Assembly (NCBI GenBank): GCA_025594325.1 | Contig: JANHCV010000004.1 | Location: 1,364,001-1,428,000 of the forward strand | DNA length: 64,000 nucleotides | Source of the DNA: Blastocladiella emersonii ATCC 22665 | Lineage: Eukaryota > Fungi > Blastocladiomycota | Direction of reading: 5' to 3' | Part shown: in pieces, positions 1,991 through 55,165 of the stretch | How positions within the stretch are numbered: the stretch's first letter is position 1 | Layout of the letters: each line of letters opens with the position of its first letter | Position numbers and translations under genes: made by a program | The notes under the pieces: model-generated | Database searches by the model: none | What the model was told of the DNA's origin: nothing | What the model saw: only the letters and a program-made list of their open reading frames with translations

Positions 1991-3692
1991 GAGTATTTGT
2001 ACGGCTCCGGGGTGTGTCCGTCCATCCGCACACTGTAAGGTATTGTGGCTGTCCTAGCGAGAAACTTTGTGCAAAACCAGCCGCTGTTGCACAAAACCCC
2101 GCATAACCGGAAAATGGCACAGTATTGTCTCGCACTACGACGGGCGAGCATCGCTGTTCCGTCGGAGCGGCTCGAGGCGGGTGCACCTGCCATCGCGCCG
2201 CGGCGAGGAAATCCTCGATCGATGCCGCTCGCGACGCGACAAGTGCGAGACGACACCAAGAACGCGAGCTGGTTGGTAGCAAGTGGGTCACGATGAGTCG
2301 CGGCGCGAGGGGAGACGCGGCGCGAGAGACGTGGCGCGACGCGTCCGACCGTCAGGTGACTTTCACGTGCACGATGCGAGACACTTTTGCAACCACGCGT
2401 TTGCGAGACAATACTTCGTGCACTCAAACGAAGTCATGGTCTTAACTTGTTGCACGCGTTTGCTCGGTGATGTTTCCGTTCGACGAAGCGTCGCGTCGCG
2501 TCTTGCCGCGTTGTCTCGACTTGGGCCCGCGCTGCCTCAATGACACGACGCGGACTGCCCAGTGTAGTTTGACGACACAATTAAGTCAACACTGCTTCTA
2601 TTTGCTACAGGGAGCGTTGTAAGAGTCTACTGCCCGTCCGACCCTGAGGTCCTTACTCTCGCTTGACAACTCGCCACGCGGTGGGGAAGCCTGACTCTAC
2701 GATACCGTTTCCCTGAAAATTCCAGCGATGATGTGCGCGAAAAAGCTATATTGTTGTATCGCGCACGGTCCACTCATCCTTCCCACCAGCAACACCGTTG
2801 ACGGCAGCGGCGTGCCCACGAACAGCCGCCCGCGGTGCTGTACAAAGGGAACCACCCGCACGAGCGACGCGGCCTTTTCACGGCACCCGTGCGAGCGATT
2901 CCCCAGCGGCGAGAGGCAGGGCGTCCTTGGGACCTCGGATTGGGTCGACAAGCATGAGTGCGTCGGGACCGTTTGAGTGGTGATGCGACTTGAGCGAACA
3001 TCTGTTACGGAACGAGCAAGTGGGCATACCGCCGCGGTGATGCTGTTGTTTGGTGGAGCACGGACGGCGGTAGTGGACGCGAACACATGCGCTGCACACT
3101 CTCGAGATATTCCATTGGTTTTGTGGAATCAGAATCAGAACCAGGCTCGATTGGACGTGTAGTCAAGCCGGCCGCGGAGGGCATGATCGCCAAGTGAACC
3201 GTGGTTATCCCGCCGAGCCGCGGCCAGTGAGTCGCTGTGAAAGATGTTCCGCGGTTGAAGAAGCTGCAACGCATCGAGCTGCAAAGAGCGGTTGGAGACG
3301 ACCGTTCTGGGCTCCATCAAGACCTCATTCCTTGCTTCGGACGGCGCGACTGGCTTCAGGGTGCTGTTCGGGACTCCAACACTGCTACCACGTAAGACTT
3401 GACCGAAGAAAATCCAATGCAGCAAGTTTCATTCGTTTCGTCTAAGAATCAGCGATATGGGAGCAGAGAGCGGGTGGGCAGCACGCTACGCGTCGCTCCG
3501 CCCGCGGTCGGGAGTCACTGGCCGCTCGCTCGCATGAACGACGCGTCCACGCCGCGACCCATGGCCGTCGCTGCAGTCCGCGGTCTCCGCGCTGCTTTCT
3601 CCGTCGCCTCATTCAACAATGTGGTGAGCAGCGTTCAAGCCTTGCTAATGCGGTATATATATACAAAGCGACTCTCCCACCCGCCTCCTCCC

Positions 3693-5397
3693 TCACGCCG
3701 AGACGGTGGCCGGCATCCACGCGAGCCCCTGGCCCGAGTTCTCGGCGGGGTGGATCCCGAGCGCGGCGCAGAGGAGACCGTAGACCTCGACGTTCGGGAA
3801 CGCGGGGACGGCGCGGTCCGGGTGCGTGCTGGCGAGGGAGACGGCCGACGAAAAGGACGGCCCGCGCGCGAGGAAGATGGCGTTCATGTCGGTGGTCGTG
3901 GACGGCACGTACCCGTGCATGCCCGTTGGGAGAGGCTCGCCGGGGATGTCCTCGAATTGGAAGCCCTGTATTTGGGGTGGAGGTTAGCTCAAGAGTCGTG
4001 CGGGAGAGCGGGTTCAAGCGTACATTGTCGGGCACGACGACAATCGGCGGGATCCGCGCGTTGCGGCCAAAATGCAGGTCGTCGGGCAGGTCGTCGCGCG
4101 CGTACGCCGTGTAGTTGACAGGGCTCGCCTGCAGCTGCGCGAGGATCGCGGGCGCGTCGTCCATGCGCACCGGGTCGATCATGACGATCGGCCAGCGGTC
4201 GCGGACGACGACCACGTCGTGGAACTTGCCGAGCGCGCGGCGCAGCGAGAGGCGGTGGCGGTCGGCCTCGGCAGTCGACGAGGGGTCCGCGGCCTCGGCC
4301 ATGCCGTGGTCCGAGACGACGACGACGTTGGTCGAGTCCCACATGCCGGCGGCGCGGAGGAGCGCGAACAGGTCGCCGAGCGCGGAGTCGACGCGGGCGA
4401 GGGCGTCGTTGACCTCGGCGGAGTCGGGCCCCGCGGCGTGGCCGGCCTGGTCGACGTCGGGAATGTACATGGCGAGCAGGTCCGGGACCGCGGGCGTGGC
4501 GGCGGGTGGCGGGTAGCGCGGCCACTGGGCGCGTTTCCGGCCGGGCAGGCCGGGCCAGTCGTCGTGGTCCGCGTCGGGCACGTTGCGCACGAGCCCCGTG
4601 GCATTGCGCGGGTCGAGCCAGGTCATGGCGACGCCGACGCGCTCGGCGGGGGTCCAGTGGTGGTAGTGGACCCAGTACCGCGGGCGGGCGCCGCGGAACG
4701 GGGCCTCGGACCCGGGCCAGCTGCTGACGGCGGCGGTGCGGCCCTGGCGCTCGACGGCGGTCCACAGCGGCTCGGCGGCGGCCCAGAAGCGCGGGTCGGC
4801 GTTGGTGGCGGGTTCCGTGTAGGTGAAGGTGGCGTTGAGGGCCGGGTCGAAGAAGACGTTGCTGACGATGCCGTGCTCGGACGGGTACCGGCCCGTGACG
4901 AGCGTGTAGTGGTTCGGGAAGGTGATGGACGGGAACGACGGGATCAGGTGCGCGGCGCGGAACCCGTCGTGGCTCGCAGTGAAGAGCGAGGCGAGGTGCG
5001 GGGTCCGGTTGCGCGACAGGTACTCGGCGCGGAAGCCGTCGATCGAGATGAGCAAGGTGCGGGTGCCGGCACTGGCGGCGGTGCCGGGGGTGGCGGGAGC
5101 GAGAAGGCGGTCGAGCGCAAAGAGACCGAGCAGGCCGAGCAGCGTCAGGCCGACCGCGAAGCCGAGCCGGCGGACGTGGTGGTGGTGCCGCGGCGACGCC
5201 CGCTTCGACGAGCCAGCGTTGAGCGGCACATCTTCATTCTCGGCGCCGTAGTCGAGGTCGACGGTCGCAGAGTCCTCGATCAAGCGAGCCTTGGCGTCGG
5301 CCGTGACGAGCCAGGCGGCGGCGGCGGCCGCGTCGGAGCGCGCAGCGAAGGCGGGCGACGCGGTGCGGCGCGTGGCCGTGGCGACCTTGTTGTACAT
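3693..5397 (-). CDS. NPP1: Ectonucleotide pyrophosphatase/phosphodiesterase (type I phosphodiesterase, type II membrane protein)
   Basis: Motifs LLISIDGFR, FPSITFPNHYTLVTG, DVDQAGHAAGP, VVSDHGM and GMHGY...MNAIFLARGP. N-terminal TM helix. Intron 3966-4023 (GTACGC..CTAAC..CAG). Confidence 0.93.
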
Positions 5398-5930
5398 TTC
5401 GGCCGGGGTGGCGCAGCAGCGAGTGGCAATGGACCGAGCCGGCGTGATCGGTGGGCTGATGGGGCGGTTGGGGACGCCGCGGGCTCGGAACCGGTAGCGC
5501 TTCGGCGAGGCTCTAGCGCGACAGGATGAAGTTGGCGGGGAGAGCGAGACCAGAGACGGCGAGTGCAGCGACTCGCGACGGCAAGAATTACATGGAAGGG
5601 TGGCTAGTCGTGGAGTCAAGGCAGGGAGGGAGTGGGAGCGGCGATGATGGCGCGATGAGCGCGCGGCCGAGGAGGCTTGTGCGGGCGGGACGCGTTTTGG
5701 TCACGCGGCGCCCCAAAACCGCGGTTTTCGCGCGCGGCGGGGCAACACGTTCTGTTCCGCGCAGATCCTCGTGTGTTGGTCGGCCGGCCCGCCCCCCTGC
5801 CTGCCGTGCCGGCCGCGCGCGCAGTCCCCTCTCCCCCTCCCTCCCACAAAGCATCGCCGCGAGACTGAATCGGACAGCAGCAACGCATCAGCCGCTCCGC
5901 ACCACCACGCACCAACACCCCGCCACCACC

Positions 5931-45849: not shown

Positions 45850-46096
45850 GAGTTGGTGATGCAGGTGTAAGGTAGTTATTGTGCAGTGGAATGAATAGAG
45901 ACTTTGGCGTGGTAAACATACAAACAAATTACATGTCGGGTGCGAGACGCGTCGTTCATTCCGGGTGCGAGACGCGTGTCGTGCGCAGCAGCTCAAAGCG
46001 ATGCGTCACCGCTGGCCAGCTCCATCGCCGCCGGTGATCGAGGAGCGTCCGCCCGCGAGCTCTCCTTCGCGTTCACCGATCGTCCATGTATTTGCA

Positions 46097-48732
46097 ATGA
46101 ATCAGACCGCAAGCAGGCCTCCAGCGACAACAACCGCGACGGCCACGGTGACCGAATCCGCCGTCACCCCGCTCCCGCCGCCGCCACGGCGACCCCTCCT
46201 GCGCGCCGGCGACGACGACGACAGCGTGCCCTTACGCCCGTCCCCCTCGGCGACCGCGCCGCCGGACCTGCGCCGCCTGTTCGGTCTCGCGAACGAGTTC
46301 AAGGAGGGCGACGCGGCGATTGGCGTCGCCGCGGGGACCGACGCCGAGCGGACCGCCGCGCGGCTGCAGCTGTCGGTGCTCCGGCTCGGCGACATCCACG
46401 CGCAGCGGTTCACGCCTGACGCGGGGGATCCCGTAAGCCAGGCCATCGAGTCGGGCGTCGACGCGCGGGTCGCGGCGCGGATCACGGCGTGGACGCTCGA
46501 CGACCTGCGCGTGTTCCTGCTCGAGGACTCGGCGGCGCGGATCCGCGAGGTGATGCCCGGGCTCCGGTCCGAGGTGATTGCGGGGGTCGTGAAGCTGATG
46601 AGCAACGAGGAGCTGGTGCAGGTCGCGCGCAAGGTGCATAACCCGGCGGGGCCCGGCGCGACGTTGGGCGCCGAGGGGTACTTTGCGTCGCGCGTCCAGC
46701 CCAACAGCGCGACGGATGATCCTGAGGAGGTGCTCATGAGTATCCTCGAGGGGTTGAGTTACGGGTGCGGCGACGCGATCTTTGGTACGCTCACCTTCAC
46801 CGCGCACGATGCGTCCGCTGACGATTGGGAGAGTGTAGGCATCAACATCGTCGCGTCGGATCTCGAGAACGTGGCCATGCTCGAGGCCACGCTGCTCGAC
46901 GTGATCGAGACGTTCGGCCTGCACGGCGCGACGCGGCACTGCGTGCTGGCGCACATCGAGGAGCAGATGGCCGTGCACGCCGACGCGCACCGCGCGCACA
47001 TGCCCGAGGTCTCGCCCGCCTCGGCCACGCCCGCGAGCGCGACCGCCGCAGCCGTCGCAACCTCGACGCCCGGCCGCGACCTCGTGCGCGTCGCGTTCCA
47101 GTCGATTGGCGGGACGACCGACGTGAACCGCGTGTTCGGCGTCTCGGTCGAGTCCCTGCGCGCGCACGCAAGGCGGATCGCAGTGGGCCCGACCACGGGG
47201 CTGTACTACGAAACGGGCCAGGGGTCGGCGGCGACGAACGGCGCGGCCGCGGGGATCGATATGGTGACGTGCGAGGCGCGGGCGCACGGGCTCGCGCGCG
47301 CGCTGGCGAGGGAGACGGGCCACTGGTGTATCGTCAACACGGTCGCCGGGTTTATTGGGCCCGAGGTGTTCAAGACCCCCGAGCAGCTGCTCCGCGCGTG
47401 TCTCGAGGATCTGTGTATGGGCAAGCTGCACGGGTACGGCCGCGTCTCCCCTCACTCACTCACGCTCATGCCGGATCTAACATCGCTGTAACATGTAGCA
47501 TGACCTTCGGGCTCGACGTTTGCTCGACGCACCACATGGGCGCGACGCTCGACGACATGACGCGGATCCAGGAACACGTGCTGCGCGGCGGGCCCGCCTT
47601 CTACATGGCCGTGGCGGGCCGCAACGACCCGATGCTGTCGTACATCACCACGGGCTTCCGCGACCACCCGCGCCTGCGCGAGCGCCTGGGAGTGCGCGGC
47701 ACCGACGAGATGCGCCCGTTTTTTGTCGGAGAGCTCGGTGTCATGCGCGACGACGGAAGCATGACCGAGCGCGCCGGGGACACCGCGCACGTGTACCTGC
47801 GGTACCGCCGGCGCAAGGGCGACGCACGCGGCGACGAGGAGATCACGGCCGAGGCGCGCGCGATCCTCGCCAAGCTCCAGGCCCGCGGCATGGACCTCGG
47901 GTACGGCCACGACGGCCAGTTTGGCGCGCCGCCCGCCGTCCGCGCACGGCTCCAGGCCATTTACGACGACGCCAAGCGCGCGGTGCGCACCGAGCTCGAC
48001 GCGTCGCGGGTGCTGAGCCAGATGGAGGGGGCGGGCGAGCCCGTGGTGCTCGAGACGGCGGCCGCCGACCGCGACGCGTACCTCGGGCACCCGACGCGCG
48101 GCGAGGTCCTGGCGCCCGAGTCGCTCGCCTTGCTCCGCGCGTGGGGCCGCAGCGTGCCCGCTCTGCTCCCCGAAACTCCGCCGCAGGACGAGGCCGTGAT
48201 CATCATCGGTGACGGCCTCAACGCCGACGCCGTGCACGCGGGCGCCGCCGAGCTCGCCGCCCACCTGCGGGCGCAGTGCTCCCGACGCGGGATCCGCGTG
48301 CATGACCCGCCGCTCCTCGTGCGCAACGCCCGCGTGCGCGTCGGGTACCAGATCGGCCACGAGCTGTTCTCACCGCGCACCGCAGCCGCCGGGCCCGCGC
48401 CGCGCGCCGCCACCGTGTTCCTGATCGTCGGGGAGCGGCCGGGCAACGGGAACAATACCATGAGCGTGTACCAAGTCACGGCGGCGCCCGACCGGTGGGC
48501 CGCGGGCGTCGACCATTGCCACGCGCGCGTCGTGTCGGGGATCTCGGCGACGGCGCTGAGTCCTGAAGAGGCGGCGGGTGCGAGTCTCGAGTTTGTGGAC
48601 CAGGCGGTCGCGGGGATGGGTGGCGCGGTGTTTGTGGAGAAGCGGCGGACGGGGAGCGTGCCGTCGGAGCAGGGTCCGGTCAAGCAGCAGCAGCAGCAGC
48701 TGGAGCGTCGGTCGGGCGGAGTTGGGATGTGA
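46097..48732 (+). CDS. eutBC: Ethanolamine ammonia-lyase EutB-EutC fusion (adenosylcobalamin-dependent)
   Basis: EutB motifs ANEFKEGD, SRVQPN, EGLSYGCGDAIF|GIN, HCVLAH, FQSIGG, YYETGQG, VNTVAGFIGPE, LEDLCMGKLHG|MTFGLDVC, DPMLSY. EutC motifs DRDAYLGHPTRG, IIGDGLNA, NARVRVG, IVGERPG, VSGI. Introns 46785-46838 and 47434-47498. Confidence 0.93.
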
Positions 48733-48991: not shown

Positions 48992-50483
48992 ATGACCAGA
49001 CCGCCGCCGGTTGTGATCGACAACGGGACCGGGTAGGGCTCGCCTTGTCTTTGAGTGTGACGCCACGATTGTGGAGGGATGGGAGCACGCGCAGCGCAAT
49101 GAATCCATGTATCAACAACACGAGAACGACGCGTTGTTGTTGCTGTCGTCGTGCCGCGCGCGTGTGCTCGAACCCTCCCGACCGAGTGGCGCGCCACGCC
49201 AAGCACTTCGACCCCAAGCGGCTGATCGTCGCGTCGCACACACCGCGTGTAGGTACACCAAGATGGGGTACGCCGGAAACTCGGACCCGCAGTACATTCT
49301 GCCGACGACGATTGCGACGGCGGCGACGGCGGGCACGACGGGGTCAAAGTACGGCGCGGGCGGCAACCTGGCGTCCAAGCGCGGCATCGAGGACCTCGAC
49401 TTCTTCATTGGCGACGAGGCCCTGGGCAACGCCAAGACCTACAACCTGCAGTACCCGATCCGCCACGGCCAGATCGAGAACTGGGACCTCATGGAGCGGT
49501 ACTGGGAGCAGTCCATCTTCAAGTACCTGCGGTGCGAGCCCGAGGACCACCACTTCCTCCTGACCGAGCCGCCGCTCAACGCGCCCGAGAACCGCGAGTA
49601 CACGGCCGAGATCTTCTTCGAGTCCTTCAACGTGCCCGGCATGTACATTGCCGTGCAGGCGGTGCTCGCCCTCGCGGCGTCGTGGCGTTACAACAAGGAG
49701 AACTCGGGGTCGCTCACGGGCACCGTCATCGACTCGGGCGACGGCGTCACCCACGTCATCCCCGTCGCCGAGGGCTACGTGATCGGGTCGTCCATCAAGC
49801 ACATCCCGATCGCCGGCCGCGACATTACCTATTTCGTGCAGCAGCTCCTCCGCGAGCGCGGCGAGCCGATCCCGCCCGAGGACTCGCTCGAGGTCGCCAA
49901 GCGCATCAAGGAAATGTACTCGTACGTGTGCCCCGACGTGGCCAAGGAGTTCCGCAAGTACGAGGCCGACCCGCTCAAGTTCATCAAGCAGCACCAGTTC
50001 CAGCACTCGGTCAACCGCTCGACGTACACGGTCGACGTCGGCTACGAGCGGTTCCTCGGGCCCGAGGTCTTCTTCAACCCGGAGATCGCCTCGCCCGACT
50101 ACTTTACGCCGCTCCCCGACGTCCTCGACACGTGCATCCAGTCGTGCCCGATCGACACGCGCCGCGGCCTGTACAAGAACATTGTCCTGTCGGGCGGGTC
50201 CACCATGTACAAGGATATGGGCAAGCGGCTGCAGCGCGACCTCAAGAAGCTCGTCGACTCGCGCGTCGCCCTCGCCGAGCAGGTGTCCGGCGGGCACATC
50301 AAGGCCCGCGAGGTTGACGTGAACGTCGTCTCCCACAAGAAGCAGCGGTACGCCGTCTGGTTCGGCGGGTCCCTCCTCGCCGATACCGCCGAGTTCTACC
50401 AGGTCTGCCACACCAAGAAGGACTACGAGGAGTACGGGCCCAGTATCGCGCGCCACAACCGCGTCTTTGGCACCATCTCGTAG
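48992..50483 (+). CDS. ARP3: Actin-related protein 3 (Arp2/3 complex)
   Basis: VVIDNGTG|[61 protein letters not shown]. 220-nt intron 49033-49252. Confidence 0.96.
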
Positions 50484-52328: not shown

Positions 52329-53476
52329 CTACTCGCTCTTCTTCTCCTCGCTTGGTGGCTGCTGCTTCTTCTTCATCTCCTCGTCCTGGTGCAGATACCG
52401 GACAGCGTCCTTGGAGTAGACGTAGCTGAGCCCGCTCCACACGGTGGTGGTGGCGACGGCAGCCTGGAGGGGCAGCTCGGCGACGGCCCACGCGGCGGCG
52501 ACGGCGGGAACCGCGCCTGCCAGGGCCGGGGCGCTGAGCGCCGCGCCGACGTACAGGAGCTGCAGCGCCGTGTTGGCCTTGGAGATGAGCGTCGGGCGGA
52601 CCTCGGCGGACGGGAGGGAGAAGTCCCAGAAGCGGGAGATGGTTTTCTACGAGGAGGGATCGGGGGTTAAAGGTGGTGGTGGGGGAGGAAGGCGGGGTTG
52701 AGTGGGCGTACTGGCGGCGGGAGGGACTTGTAGCGGATGAAGAACGACGCGACGACGAGGCCCGCGTCGCGGCCGATGATCAGGGCGGCGAGCGGGACTA
52801 CACAGATTACGAGTCGCGTTAGAATCGGCCCAGCAACAACGCGCCCTCCCCCAAAACACGTACGAGGAATCAGCCCCGCCCAGCCAAGACTCACCGTGAG
52901 CGTGGTCATGAGCGCCTTATCCGCCATGGGGTCGAGGATCGTCCCGAGCACGCTGCGCATGTTCAAGTTGCGGGCAATGAACCCGTCGAGCATGTCGGTG
53001 ACGGCCGACACGGCAAACAGGCCGAGCGCCCAGTCGTACTTGCCCTGCACGATCAGGTACCCGAGCGCGGGCGTGCTCAGCAGCCGCGCAAACGACATGG
53101 CGTTCGGGATCGTGTAGATGTTCTCGTGCACGATATCGAGCTTGCCGAGCGAGCTGGCGCTGGCGCTGACGCTGCCGCGACGGGACGGGGTCGCCGAGGT
53201 GGGATCGGCGGGCGGCGAGGCGAGCGGCGTCGCGGCGCCGGCCTTGGCGGCAGCCGGATCAGCGGGAGCCTGCGTGTTCTGCTGCTGCTGCGAGGTCGGA
53301 GACGACGTCGACATGGCGCGCATGGCCGGGGCAAACGCAGCGATCGGCGCGAAGGTGGCAGCGGCCGCGGGGTGGCGCAGCGGGTGCGCCTGCTTCAAGG
53401 CGGCCGAGACCCGGCACTGGGCCAGGGGACCGCGGAGCGCGGCCAGCGGGCGGCGGCAGCGGGCGAGGGCGAACAT
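52329..53476 (-). CDS. CRD1: Cardiolipin synthase (CDP-alcohol phosphatidyltransferase)
   Basis: Mitochondrial presequence, NIYTIPNAMSFARL, DMLDGFIAR...GTILDPMADK, PTLISKANTALQL. Two introns. Confidence 0.92.
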
Positions 53477-53697
53477 GGCGGCGCTGGTGCGTGTGCGGGC
53501 AGTTACATGCAAGTGCGAGGTTGCGTGCGGTTGTTGATGATCCGGAGAGGGAGGCCGGGTCGGAAGGACCGGAGCGGCGCAGCAGCCGAGCGCGCGGCAA
53601 ACTCCACTCTCGCTTCGCCACGCTCGACGTCACCCCAGCAGTACAGGCACACGTGATCTAGGACTAAATTGTATACACTATAGCGGATGGCGATCGC

Positions 53698-54295: not shown

Positions 54296-55165
54296 ATGGC
54301 CGAATCGCGCCAGGAGCTGCTGCACTGGATCAACAACCTGACGGGGCTCGGGCTGGTCAAGATCGAGGAGCTCGGCAAGGGCTACGCGCTGTGCCAGATC
54401 TTCGACTCGGTGTTCCTCGACGTGCCGCTGCGCAAGGTCAAGTTCAACGCCAAGCACGAGTTCGAGTACATCCAGAACTTCAAGGTGCTGCAGTCCGTCT
54501 TCGACAAGCACAAGATCCCAAACCACATCCCCGTCGAGCGCCTCGTCAAGCTCAAGTTCCAGGACAACATTGAGTTCTGCCAGGTGCGTTGCTCCGCGTG
54601 GTCGTGGGGCAAGTAGCGCGGCACCACTGACAACGCGTCGCTTCCCCCAAACCAGTTTGTGAAAAAGTTCTGGGACTCGCACTTCCCCGGCCACTTCTAC
54701 GACGCGGCCGCGCGCCGCGCCGGCGCCGGTGCGCCCGCGGTGGTGGCGTCGGCGGGTCCCGCCAAGGTCAGCGCGCGGGCGACGGCGGGCGGCGCCGCCA
54801 GCATGGGGGCGCGCGTCAAGGCGTCGTCGAGCCCGTCGCTCGCGGGCGGGCTCGCGTCGGCGGGCAGCGCCAGCAACGTGTCGGCGGCGGCGCTGCAGCA
54901 CGCGCAGGTGCAGGTGGCCGAGCTGCAGGGCCAGCTCGACGAGGCGCACGGCGCGCTCGAGTCCATGGCCAAGGAGCGCGACTTCTACTTTGGCAAGCTG
55001 CGCGCCGTCGAGGTGATGATGCAGGCGCTGCAGCAGCAGGGCGAGGCCGCCGTCGAGATCCAGGCCGTCCTCGACACGCTGTACGCGCCCGACGCCCCCG
55101 AGCCCTTCGACGCGGCCGCCAGCGCCGAGCCCATGCCCGACGACGGCATGATCGAGTCGTTCTAA
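54296..55165 (+). CDS. BIM1: Microtubule plus-end binding protein EB1/Bim1
   Basis: CH domain ESRQELLHWIN...QNFKVLQ...KFQDNIEFCQ|FVKKFWD; EBH ERDFYFGKLRAVE. Intron 54584-54655. Confidence 0.95.

What the first reader, a model, noticed from the sequence alone, without database searches (positions are those of the whole stretch)
46097..48732. Bacterial-type B12-dependent ethanolamine ammonia-lyase as a single spliced EutB-EutC fusion in a fungal-like genome
Seen: complete EutB and EutC halves in one spliced frame. Residues corresponding to the E. coli EutB substrate site are retained (R and Q in SRVQPN, N in GIN, S in FQS, E in YETGQG, D in GLDVC, Y in MLSY). Two canonical spliceosomal introns are present and host genes flank it. 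Established: EAL is an adenosylcobalamin radical enzyme, usually two subunits in bacterial eut operons; Dikarya generally lack B12 enzymes, while early-diverging fungi retain some. Inference: a domesticated horizontal transfer enabling use of ethanolamine (from phosphatidylethanolamine) as an N/C source. No EutA reactivase or microcompartment gene is in the window, so cofactor supply and reactivation must be solved another way. I cannot check whether this has been described.
Basis: partly seen in the sequence, partly recalled or inferred. Interest (0 to 1): 0.82.

Follow-up and report, generated by a model that had tools for sequence, protein, structure and literature searches.

The report
Spliced EutB-EutC ethanolamine ammonia-lyase in Blastocladiella
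This water mould carries an intact, intron-containing gene for the vitamin-B12-dependent enzyme that splits ethanolamine into acetaldehyde and ammonia; it was inherited within its phylum, and papers on B12 use in eukaryotes do not list this enzyme.

Summary
Window 46097-48732 (+) holds a three-exon gene, with introns of 54 and 65 nt, for an 838-aa EutB-EutC fusion. It is identical to GenBank 'hypothetical protein' H9P43_004243 of Blastocladiella emersonii ATCC 22665.

Evidence that it is a working enzyme gene:
- All E. coli EutB substrate-site residues are kept.
- The predicted fold matches solved EAL structures.

Evidence that it is a resident gene, not contamination:
- GC3 matches the neighbouring host genes.
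- Eukaryotic genes flank it.
- An independent 63.6-kb contig spans the locus.

It is not a recent or private transfer:
- Fused orthologues occur in all eight sampled Blastocladiomycota genomes (six genera), Gonapodya, Cyanophora and unnamed intron-bearing eukaryotic contigs.
- Both window introns sit at positions shared with other genera. The Paraphysoderma intron at the same site as intron 1 is removed in RNA-seq contigs.
- The fusion and its structured linker are bacterial. The eukaryotic clade nests inside fused bacterial EutBC.

Caveats: no B. emersonii RNA was available, and activity, cofactor supply, reactivation and localisation remain untested.

Most likely this is a working adenosylcobalamin-dependent EAL acquired long ago from bacteria. 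No paper found describes a eukaryotic EAL. Other first-stage notes of this scan on the same genome report B12-handling and ethanolamine-permease genes; I did not check them.

The parts
46097..46784 (+). Exon 1: residues 1-229 plus the first base of codon G230. It holds a low-complexity N-terminal extension (residues 1-56, 46097-46264) and the first part of the EutB domain, with R199 and Q201.
   Evidence: EutB profile 5-178, E 3.2e-48; low pLDDT for residues 1-56; the extension varies between orthologues and has no signal peptide.
46785..46838 (+). Intron 1: 54 nt, phase 1, GT..AG with a CTGAC branch site. It is in frame and has no stop. It splits codon G230, two residues before the substrate-site residue N232, inside predicted strand 228-232.
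   Evidence: same position and phase in Catenaria and Paraphysoderma; the Paraphysoderma intron at this site is absent from RNA-seq contig L094; strand 228-232.
46839..47433 (+). Exon 2: residues 230-427 plus two bases of codon G428. It holds the EutB core with N232, F316, S318 and E354, and a low-complexity loop insert specific to the Blastocladiales (about residues 275-312, 46973-47086).
   Evidence: EutB profile up to 344, E 7e-42; the insert is present only in Blastocladiella, Catenaria, Allomyces and Sorochytrium; pLDDT 52-64 over the insert.
47434..47498 (+). Intron 2: 65 nt, phase 2, GT..AG with a CTAAC branch site. It contains stops and shifts the frame, so it must be removed.
   Evidence: same position (MGKLH|G) and phase in Allomyces and Sorochytrium.
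47499..47772 (+). Exon 3, first part: the end of the EutB domain (residues 428-519) with D434, M464, L474 and Y476.
   Evidence: EutB profile 347-434.
47773..47943 (+). Exon 3: a structured helical linker (about residues 520-576) that joins the EutB and EutC parts. It is conserved between bacterial and eukaryotic fused forms.
   Evidence: nearly invariant Y527, Y530, D536, R538, E546, R557, G558, G564 over 95 fused sequences; helices 523-533 and 540-556, pLDDT 93-98.
47944..48612 (+). Exon 3: the EutC (small-subunit) domain, residues 577-799.
   Evidence: PF05985, E 2.9e-32; 3any_B, 6e-8; 3abo_B, TM by target 0.74.
48613..48732 (+). Exon 3: a poorly conserved C-terminal tail (residues 800-838, with a QQQQQ run) and the stop codon.
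   Evidence: pLDDT below 50 for residues 808-838; tails differ between orthologues.
48993..50483 (+). Downstream host gene of the actin family (ARP3-like), with an intron just after its start codon.
   Evidence: PF00022, E 8e-78; GC3 0.92 against 0.91 for the EAL gene.
54617..55162 (+). EB1 gene, C-terminal part. EB1 is the immediate upstream neighbour of the EAL gene in Allomyces and B. britannica, so the linkage is conserved.

Best explanation
This is the resident nuclear gene of Blastocladiella emersonii for an adenosylcobalamin-dependent ethanolamine ammonia-lyase (EC 4.3.1.7), made as one 838-aa EutB-linker-EutC chain.

After both introns are removed, the EutB TIM barrel binds ethanolamine with the same residues as the E. 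coli enzyme. The EutC part covers the cobalamin. Radical chemistry then yields acetaldehyde and ammonia (inferred from homology).

The fused layout was inherited from bacteria. One old transfer, or very few, brought a fused bacterial EutBC into eukaryotes. Since then the gene has passed vertically within Blastocladiomycota, gaining introns, host codon usage and a lineage-specific surface loop.

It works without EutA or a microcompartment, as fused bacterial EutBC appears to. The adenosylcobalamin would come from the cobalamin uptake and adenosylation genes that this phylum retains (inferred). The likely role is use of ethanolamine, free or released from phosphatidylethanolamine, as a nitrogen and carbon source.
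For: Gene model and domains:
- The spliced model equals the deposited protein exactly.
- The EutB profile is collinear across all three exons, and EutC follows.
- Solved EAL large subunits match at E 1e-77 and 5e-69.
- The AlphaFold model has pLDDT 88.6. It matches 3abo_A at TM 0.89 and rmsd 2.3 A, and 3abo_B at TM 0.74.
- R160, Q162, N193, F245, S247, E287, D362, M392, L402 and Y404 equivalents are identical in every sequence of the eukaryotic clade whose alignment is reliable there. The only departures are gaps in fragments and a poorly aligned stretch of the partial Cyanophora model.

Resident gene, not an artefact:
- GC3 is 0.91, against 0.92 and 0.85 for the neighbours.
- Eukaryotic genes flank it.
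- A 63.6-kb Logan contig spans 45000-50500 with no differences.

Vertical history:
- Orthologues of 805-869 aa occur in B. britannica, Catenaria, three Allomyces species, Sorochytrium and Paraphysoderma.
- Intron sites 229 (phase 1) and 427 (phase 2) are shared between genera.
- EB1 and MCM2 linkage is shared.
- The gene tree follows the species tree, and Blastocladiomycota monophyly is not rejected (p-AU 0.43).

Expression in the phylum: Paraphysoderma RNA-seq contigs lack all five introns.

Bacterial origin of the fusion:
- The eukaryotic clade (support 98/96) nests within fused bacterial EutBC.
- Linker residues are conserved.

Cofactor context: PMC8085122 reports the complete cobalamin set in Blastocladiomycota.
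Against: - No transcript, protein or activity data exist here for B. emersonii itself. No RNA run was listed.
- Intron 1 is in frame and has no stop, so a retained-intron isoform cannot be excluded from the sequence alone.
- EAL inactivates itself during turnover, and I looked for a reactivase only in this window.
- In animals adenosylcobalamin is made in mitochondria (my knowledge). This protein has no convincing mitochondrial presequence or signal peptide, so how it meets its cofactor is open.
- Substrate specificity is inferred only.
- Many bacterial relatives carry export signals. Their physiology may therefore differ from classical EAL.
Confidence: 0.75

Rival explanations
1. Recent horizontal transfer into this species, or bacterial contamination or a chimeric assembly.
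For: The family is overwhelmingly bacterial. The nearest bacterial relatives are 40-45% identical.
Against: The gene has two spliceosomal introns at sites shared with other fungi. Its GC3 matches the host. Eukaryotic genes lie on both sides. A 63.6-kb contig spans the locus without differences, and separate contigs cross both introns. Orthologues are present in all eight sampled Blastocladiomycota genomes, six genera.
Confidence: 0.02
2. A conserved relic whose function has changed. It might act on another amino alcohol or small amine, or play a non-catalytic or B12-independent role, rather than ethanolamine deamination.
For: There are no eut partner genes in the window. Blastocladiales carry an insert within the EutB domain region. 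Many bacterial fused relatives have Tat or Sec signals, which hints at a physiology unlike classical cytoplasmic EAL. Function has not been tested in any fused member that I could find.
Against: Every known substrate-contact residue is unchanged across the clade. The barrel superposes on E. coli EutB at 2.3 A. The insert is a low-confidence stretch in the model rather than a change to the pocket.
Confidence: 0.13
3. The gene is an ancestral eukaryotic gene, lost almost everywhere, rather than a bacterial transfer. Alternatively it spread among eukaryotes by eukaryote-to-eukaryote transfer.
For: The eukaryotic clade unites fungi of two phyla, the glaucophyte Cyanophora, and unnamed eukaryotic contigs of very different base composition: 27% GC beside a Cullin gene, and 46% GC. 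Exclusive monophyly of the named fungi is borderline (p-AU 0.065).
Against: When rooted on unfused EutB, the clade nests inside bacterial fused diversity. No other named eukaryote appeared among 5.8 billion clustered proteins. The Cyanophora model is partial and could come from a contaminant.
Confidence: 0.1

Closest known systems
E. coli / Salmonella / Listeria ethanolamine ammonia-lyase EutB + EutC (PDB 3ABO, 2QEZ)
   Same: Both Pfam domains are present. The EutB part is 32-34% identical by structural alignment. All substrate-site residues are kept. The TIM-barrel and small-subunit folds match.
   Different: It is one chain instead of two subunits, with a helical linker of about 57 residues. 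It has spliceosomal introns. No eut operon, EutA reactivase or microcompartment lies nearby. It carries a lineage-specific insert of about 38 residues and an N-terminal extension of 56 residues.
Bacterial single-chain EutBC proteins of about 690-810 aa (Myxococcota, Acidobacteriota, Planctomycetota, Bacteroidota, Geobacteraceae and others)
   Same: Same domain order and conserved linker, at 37-45% identity. They are the sister groups in the tree. They are usually not next to EutA, shell or permease genes.
   Different: Many bacterial members have Tat-like or Sec-like N-terminal signals (at least 60 of 162 by a strict pattern). The fungal proteins have none. The bacterial genes have no introns.
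The cobalamin-dependent enzymes listed for eukaryotes (MetH, methylmalonyl-CoA mutase, class II ribonucleotide reductase)
   Same: It depends on externally supplied B12. It is retained in early-diverging fungi and absent from Dikarya, as described for the other B12 enzymes (PMC8085122).
   Different: It is a different enzyme family. It is not in the list of eukaryotic B12 enzymes in PMC2667541, and PMC8085122 did not survey it.

Membership tests
Adenosylcobalamin-dependent ethanolamine ammonia-lyase (EutBC, EC 4.3.1.7) | Full-length EutB large-subunit domain (PF06751) | tested here: met
   profile positions 5-434 of 435 are covered collinearly over three exons (165, 144 and 69 bits, cut-off 25); 2qez_A E 1.4e-77, 3abo_A E 4.9e-69.
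Adenosylcobalamin-dependent ethanolamine ammonia-lyase (EutBC, EC 4.3.1.7) | EutC small-subunit domain (PF05985) | tested here: met
   112 bits (cut-off 25.8), profile 30-226 of 235; 3abo_B and 7xrm_B, TM by target 0.73-0.74.
Adenosylcobalamin-dependent ethanolamine ammonia-lyase (EutBC, EC 4.3.1.7) | Substrate-binding and catalytic residues of E. coli EutB (R160, Q162, N193, E287, D362; also F245, S247, M392, Y404). The residue list is from my knowledge of Shibata 2010 and Mori 2014. The role of E287 is cited in PMC4413051 and PMC8473560. | tested here: met
   R199, Q201, N232, E354, D434, F316, S318, M464 and Y476 are all identical. They are invariant in the 18-sequence eukaryotic alignment wherever the alignment is reliable. 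Searches give the role of E287.
Adenosylcobalamin-dependent ethanolamine ammonia-lyase (EutBC, EC 4.3.1.7) | TIM-barrel large subunit with the small subunit packed against it | tested here: met
   pLDDT 88.6, pTM 0.89. 3abo_A gives TM by target 0.89 and rmsd 2.3 A over 480 columns.
Adenosylcobalamin-dependent ethanolamine ammonia-lyase (EutBC, EC 4.3.1.7) | Binds adenosylcobalamin and converts ethanolamine to acetaldehyde and ammonia | not testable with these tools
   Needs a biochemical assay.
Classical eut operon / Eut microcompartment system | EutA reactivase, shell proteins (PF00936) and EutE/EutD/EutG encoded alongside | tested here: not met
   the window's ORFs hit eukaryotic housekeeping families only. 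I did not scan the rest of the genome. The gene is therefore not part of a eut operon, although the enzyme itself qualifies as an EAL.
Bacterial single-chain (fused) EutBC | One chain in the order EutB-linker-EutC, with conserved linker residues | tested here: met
   linker residues Y527, Y530, D536, R538, E546, R557, G558 and G564 are at least 90% conserved across 95 fused sequences, and the linker is modelled as helices.
Bacterial single-chain (fused) EutBC | N-terminal Tat or Sec export signal (common in the family, not universal) | tested here: not met
   0 of 12 eukaryotic sequences have one, against at least 60 of 162 bacterial sequences by a strict pattern.
Gene of bacterial origin transferred to eukaryotes | The eukaryotic sequences nest inside bacterial diversity and are patchily distributed among eukaryotes | tested here: met
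   the eukaryotic clade (98/96) lies inside a fully supported fused radiation that is otherwise bacterial wherever its members are named; the only named eukaryotes are Blastocladiomycota, Gonapodya and Cyanophora.
Gene of bacterial origin transferred to eukaryotes | Recent event: composition unlike the host, no introns, confined to one species | tested here: not met
   GC3 equals the host; shared introns; phylum-wide.

The most novel reading that the evidence does not exclude
Ethanolamine ammonia-lyase is a fourth cobalamin-dependent enzyme family in eukaryotes. It would have been present as a fused, intron-bearing gene since before the radiation of Blastocladiomycota, possibly since the common ancestor of zoosporic fungi. 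It is shared with other, still unidentified eukaryotic lineages. It would work with no reactivase or microcompartment, and it would need adenosylcobalamin outside the methylmalonyl-CoA mutase pathway. That in turn implies a route for delivering this cofactor in eukaryotes that has not been described.
Probability: 0.4. Interest if true: 0.7.

Novelty: new member of a known kind. Interest (0 to 1): 0.55.

Why it matters
Comparative papers list only methionine synthase, methylmalonyl-CoA mutase and class II ribonucleotide reductase as B12 enzymes of eukaryotes (PMC2667541). The survey of B12 use in early fungi did not include EAL (PMC8085122).

A working EAL in zoosporic fungi would add a B12-dependent catabolic route for nitrogen and carbon. 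It would give these fungi one more reason to depend on bacterial B12. It would also raise a concrete question: how is an adenosylcobalamin enzyme loaded, and repaired after self-inactivation, in a eukaryotic cell without EutA?

All of this can be tested with growth assays and a recombinant enzyme. The enzyme family, the fused layout and the automatic annotation of several orthologues are already in public databases. The advance is therefore one of recognition and evolutionary context, not a new kind of system.

Tried and rejected
- RNA evidence for this species. The look-up of sequencing runs listed no RNA run. The four runs found are genomic and from one sample, so they confirm the assembly but say nothing on splicing.
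- A shared intron between Gonapodya and Blastocladiomycota. None was found; Gonapodya has its own intron sites.
- Naming a bacterial donor. The nearest non-fungal group (P0012-P0025) has no relative above 48% identity in 185,579 prokaryotic species genomes. Its contigs give mixed signals: compact, GC-rich, kinases and MsrA in L007; a PF14811 gene that I recall as a eukaryote-restricted family (not checked) in L089. Whether it is bacterial or eukaryotic stays open.
- A mitochondrial or secretory signal on the fungal protein. The N-terminal extensions are variable, partly acidic and not hydrophobic.
- The low-complexity insert as a hidden third intron. I rejected this. It is in frame, its ends are conserved as protein in four genera, and I saw no plausible splice-site pair by eye in the sequence.
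- Literature on eukaryotic or fungal EAL. Ten searches found none. Shibata 2010 (PMC2924083) is not held, so the residue list rests partly on my memory.
- dN/dS among the Allomyces species.
Full report
**What is in the sequence**

The + strand of 46097-48732 holds three exons: 46097-46784, 46839-47433 and 47499-48732. They join into a 2517-nt reading frame for 838 residues.

- Intron 1 is 54 nt, GT..AG, with a CTGAC branch site. It is in frame and has no stop.
- Intron 2 is 65 nt, GT..AG, with a CTAAC branch site. It breaks the frame.

The spliced product is identical to the deposited protein 'hypothetical protein H9P43_004243 [Blastocladiella emersonii ATCC 22665]'. The organism is therefore a zoosporic fungus of the Blastocladiomycota. 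The gene model already exists but is unnamed.

**Domains, residues and fold**

- Pfam EutB runs collinearly through the three exons: profile 5-178 in exon 1, up to 344 in exon 2, and 347-434 in exon 3. EutC follows in exon 3.
- Solved EAL large subunits match at E 1.4e-77 (Listeria 2QEZ) and 4.9e-69 (E. coli 3ABO). The small subunit matches at about 6e-8.
- Counting along the HMMER alignment gives these equivalences: R199=R160, Q201=Q162, N232=N193, F316/S318=F245/S247, E354=E287, D434=D362, M464=M392, Y476=Y404.
- All of these are identical here. They are invariant in every member of the eukaryotic clade whose alignment is reliable there.
- The role of E287 is stated in PMC4413051 and PMC8473560. 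The rest of the residue list is from my memory of Shibata 2010 and Mori 2014.
- An AlphaFold model built from 95 fused sequences has pLDDT 88.6 and pTM 0.89. Its EutB part superposes on 3abo_A (TM by target 0.89, rmsd 2.3 A). Its EutC part superposes on 3abo_B (TM 0.74).
- Low-confidence parts are the N-terminal 56 residues, a loop at about 275-312, and the last 31 residues.

**A resident gene, not an artefact**

- GC3 is 0.91. The ARP3-like gene 260 nt downstream has 0.92 and the upstream ORF 0.85.
- The window otherwise carries eukaryotic housekeeping genes: MCM, VDAC-type porin, Lon, TAP42, Cwc15, EB1 and a glycogenin-like GT8.
- An independently assembled 63.6-kb Logan contig spans 45000-50500 without a difference. 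Smaller contigs from other runs of the same sample cross both introns unspliced. These are genomic data and show no sign of a chimera.

**Splicing**

No RNA run for this organism was listed, so the evidence is comparative.

I mapped exon structures of the orthologues exactly.
- The window's intron 1 site (GDAIF|G, phase 1) recurs in Catenaria and Paraphysoderma.
- Its intron 2 site (MGKLH|G, phase 2) recurs in Allomyces and Sorochytrium.
- Two further sites are shared among other genera.

Paraphysoderma gives direct support. Three RNA-seq-derived Logan contigs encode the protein without interruption. One of them aligns to the genome with five GT..AG gaps of 56-80 nt, including the gap at the intron 1 site.

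Intron 1 splits codon G230 inside predicted strand 228-232, two residues before N232. Retaining it would add 18 residues at the substrate site.

**History**

Fused orthologues of 805-869 aa occur in B. britannica, Catenaria, three Allomyces species, Sorochytrium and Paraphysoderma. A 792-aa orthologue occurs in Gonapodya, a monoblepharid.

Gene linkage is conserved:
- EB1 is the immediate upstream neighbour in Allomyces and B. britannica, and lies 6 kb away here.
- MCM2 is adjacent in Allomyces, and an MCM gene lies in this window.

A careful maximum-likelihood tree shows the following.
- It recovers (Sorochytrium,((Catenaria,(B. emersonii, B. britannica)), Allomyces)).
- It places all named eukaryotes in one clade (support 98/96).
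- That clade also holds Cyanophora paradoxa EP00741_P014436.
- It holds a 27%-GC contig with a Cullin neighbour and an intron between the EutB and EutC parts.
- It holds another intron-bearing contig.
- It holds an mRNA-like contig with long untranslated regions.

Blastocladiomycota monophyly is not rejected (p-AU 0.43). Exclusive monophyly of the named fungi is borderline (p-AU 0.065).

The clade is sister (88/88) to a group of unknown origin. Both lie inside a fully supported radiation of fused EutBC that is otherwise bacterial wherever its members are named. That unknown group has no relative above 48% identity among 185,579 prokaryotic species genomes.

A profile of the eukaryotic clade found no further named eukaryote among 5.8 billion clustered proteins.

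The linker between the two domains is conserved and modelled as helices in bacteria and fungi alike. The fusion therefore predates the move into eukaryotes.

**Partners and cofactor**

No EutA or shell family appears in the window. This is also the norm for the fused bacterial genes. Among 80 neighbouring ORFs from 40 loci, no EutA, shell-protein or amino-acid-permease family was among the recurrent families listed. Only the 25 most frequent families were shown, so single occurrences cannot be excluded.

Orlowska et al. 2021 report that Blastocladiomycota keep the complete set of cobalamin-handling proteins, including the adenosyltransferase. They do not mention EAL (PMC8085122). Zhang et al. 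2009 list only MetH, MCM and RNR II for eukaryotes (PMC2667541).

Unchecked first-stage notes on the same genome report adenosyltransferase, MMADHC/MMAA, ABCD4-like, LMBRD1-like and tandem bacterial-type ethanolamine-permease genes. I could not test these.

The fungal N-terminal extensions are variable and show no signal peptide or clear mitochondrial presequence. Localisation, and the way the enzyme gets adenosylcobalamin, are open.

**Verdict**

It is wrong to see the fusion as a fungal novelty or the transfer as a local event. This is an old, vertically inherited member of the bacterial single-chain EutBC family, and most probably a working B12-dependent EAL (confidence 0.75).

I found no paper that describes a eukaryotic EAL. 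Several orthologues are already auto-annotated as EutB-domain proteins.

I rate it a new member of a known kind, with moderate interest.

Noticed in passing
Proteins P0029-P0120 and P0274-P0354 (bacterial fused EutBC); P0015, P0016, P0020, P0022, P0025: Many bacterial single-chain EutBC proteins start with a twin-arginine (Tat-like) signal: at least 60 of 162 by a strict pattern. Others start with a Sec-like hydrophobic signal, as do several members of the unassigned sister group. A periplasmic or secreted B12-dependent ammonia-lyase would be unusual and may mean this fused family has its own physiology.
   Followed up: partly
window 46973-47086 (residues about 275-312): A low-complexity Ala/Thr/Ser/Pro-rich insert within the EutB domain region. 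It occurs only in Blastocladiella, Catenaria, Allomyces (where it is longer and Ser-rich) and Sorochytrium. Paraphysoderma, Gonapodya and the bacteria lack it. It is modelled with low confidence.
   Followed up: partly
window 52670-53629 (-): A CDP-alcohol phosphatidyltransferase gene (PF01066) lies 4 kb downstream of the EAL gene. A type I phosphodiesterase gene (PF01663) lies at 3616-5700. Both are phospholipid or head-group enzymes. The proximity may well be chance.
   Followed up: no
window 45937-45978: The 16-nt motif CGGGTGCGAGACGCGT occurs twice, 10 nt apart, about 120-160 nt upstream of the EAL start codon.
   Followed up: no
L006 8001-10840; L008 7475-9596: Unidentified eukaryotic metagenome contigs carry fused EutBC genes interrupted by introns. 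One is 27% GC and sits beside a Cullin gene; the other is 47% GC and sits beside LRR genes. Prokaryotic gene callers had split the genes into separate EutB and EutC ORFs.
   Followed up: partly
P0021 (EukProt EP00741 Cyanophora paradoxa P014436): A partial EutB model from the glaucophyte Cyanophora falls in the eukaryotic clade. It could be a true algal gene or could come from a fungal or protist contaminant of the culture.
   Followed up: no
L010, L015, L017, L019, L022, L037, L060 (Geobacteraceae-type loci): A conserved ORF of about 290 aa with no Pfam match lies immediately upstream of the fused EutBC gene, and two conserved ORFs of about 260 aa lie downstream. This may be an uncharacterised operon.
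   Followed up: no
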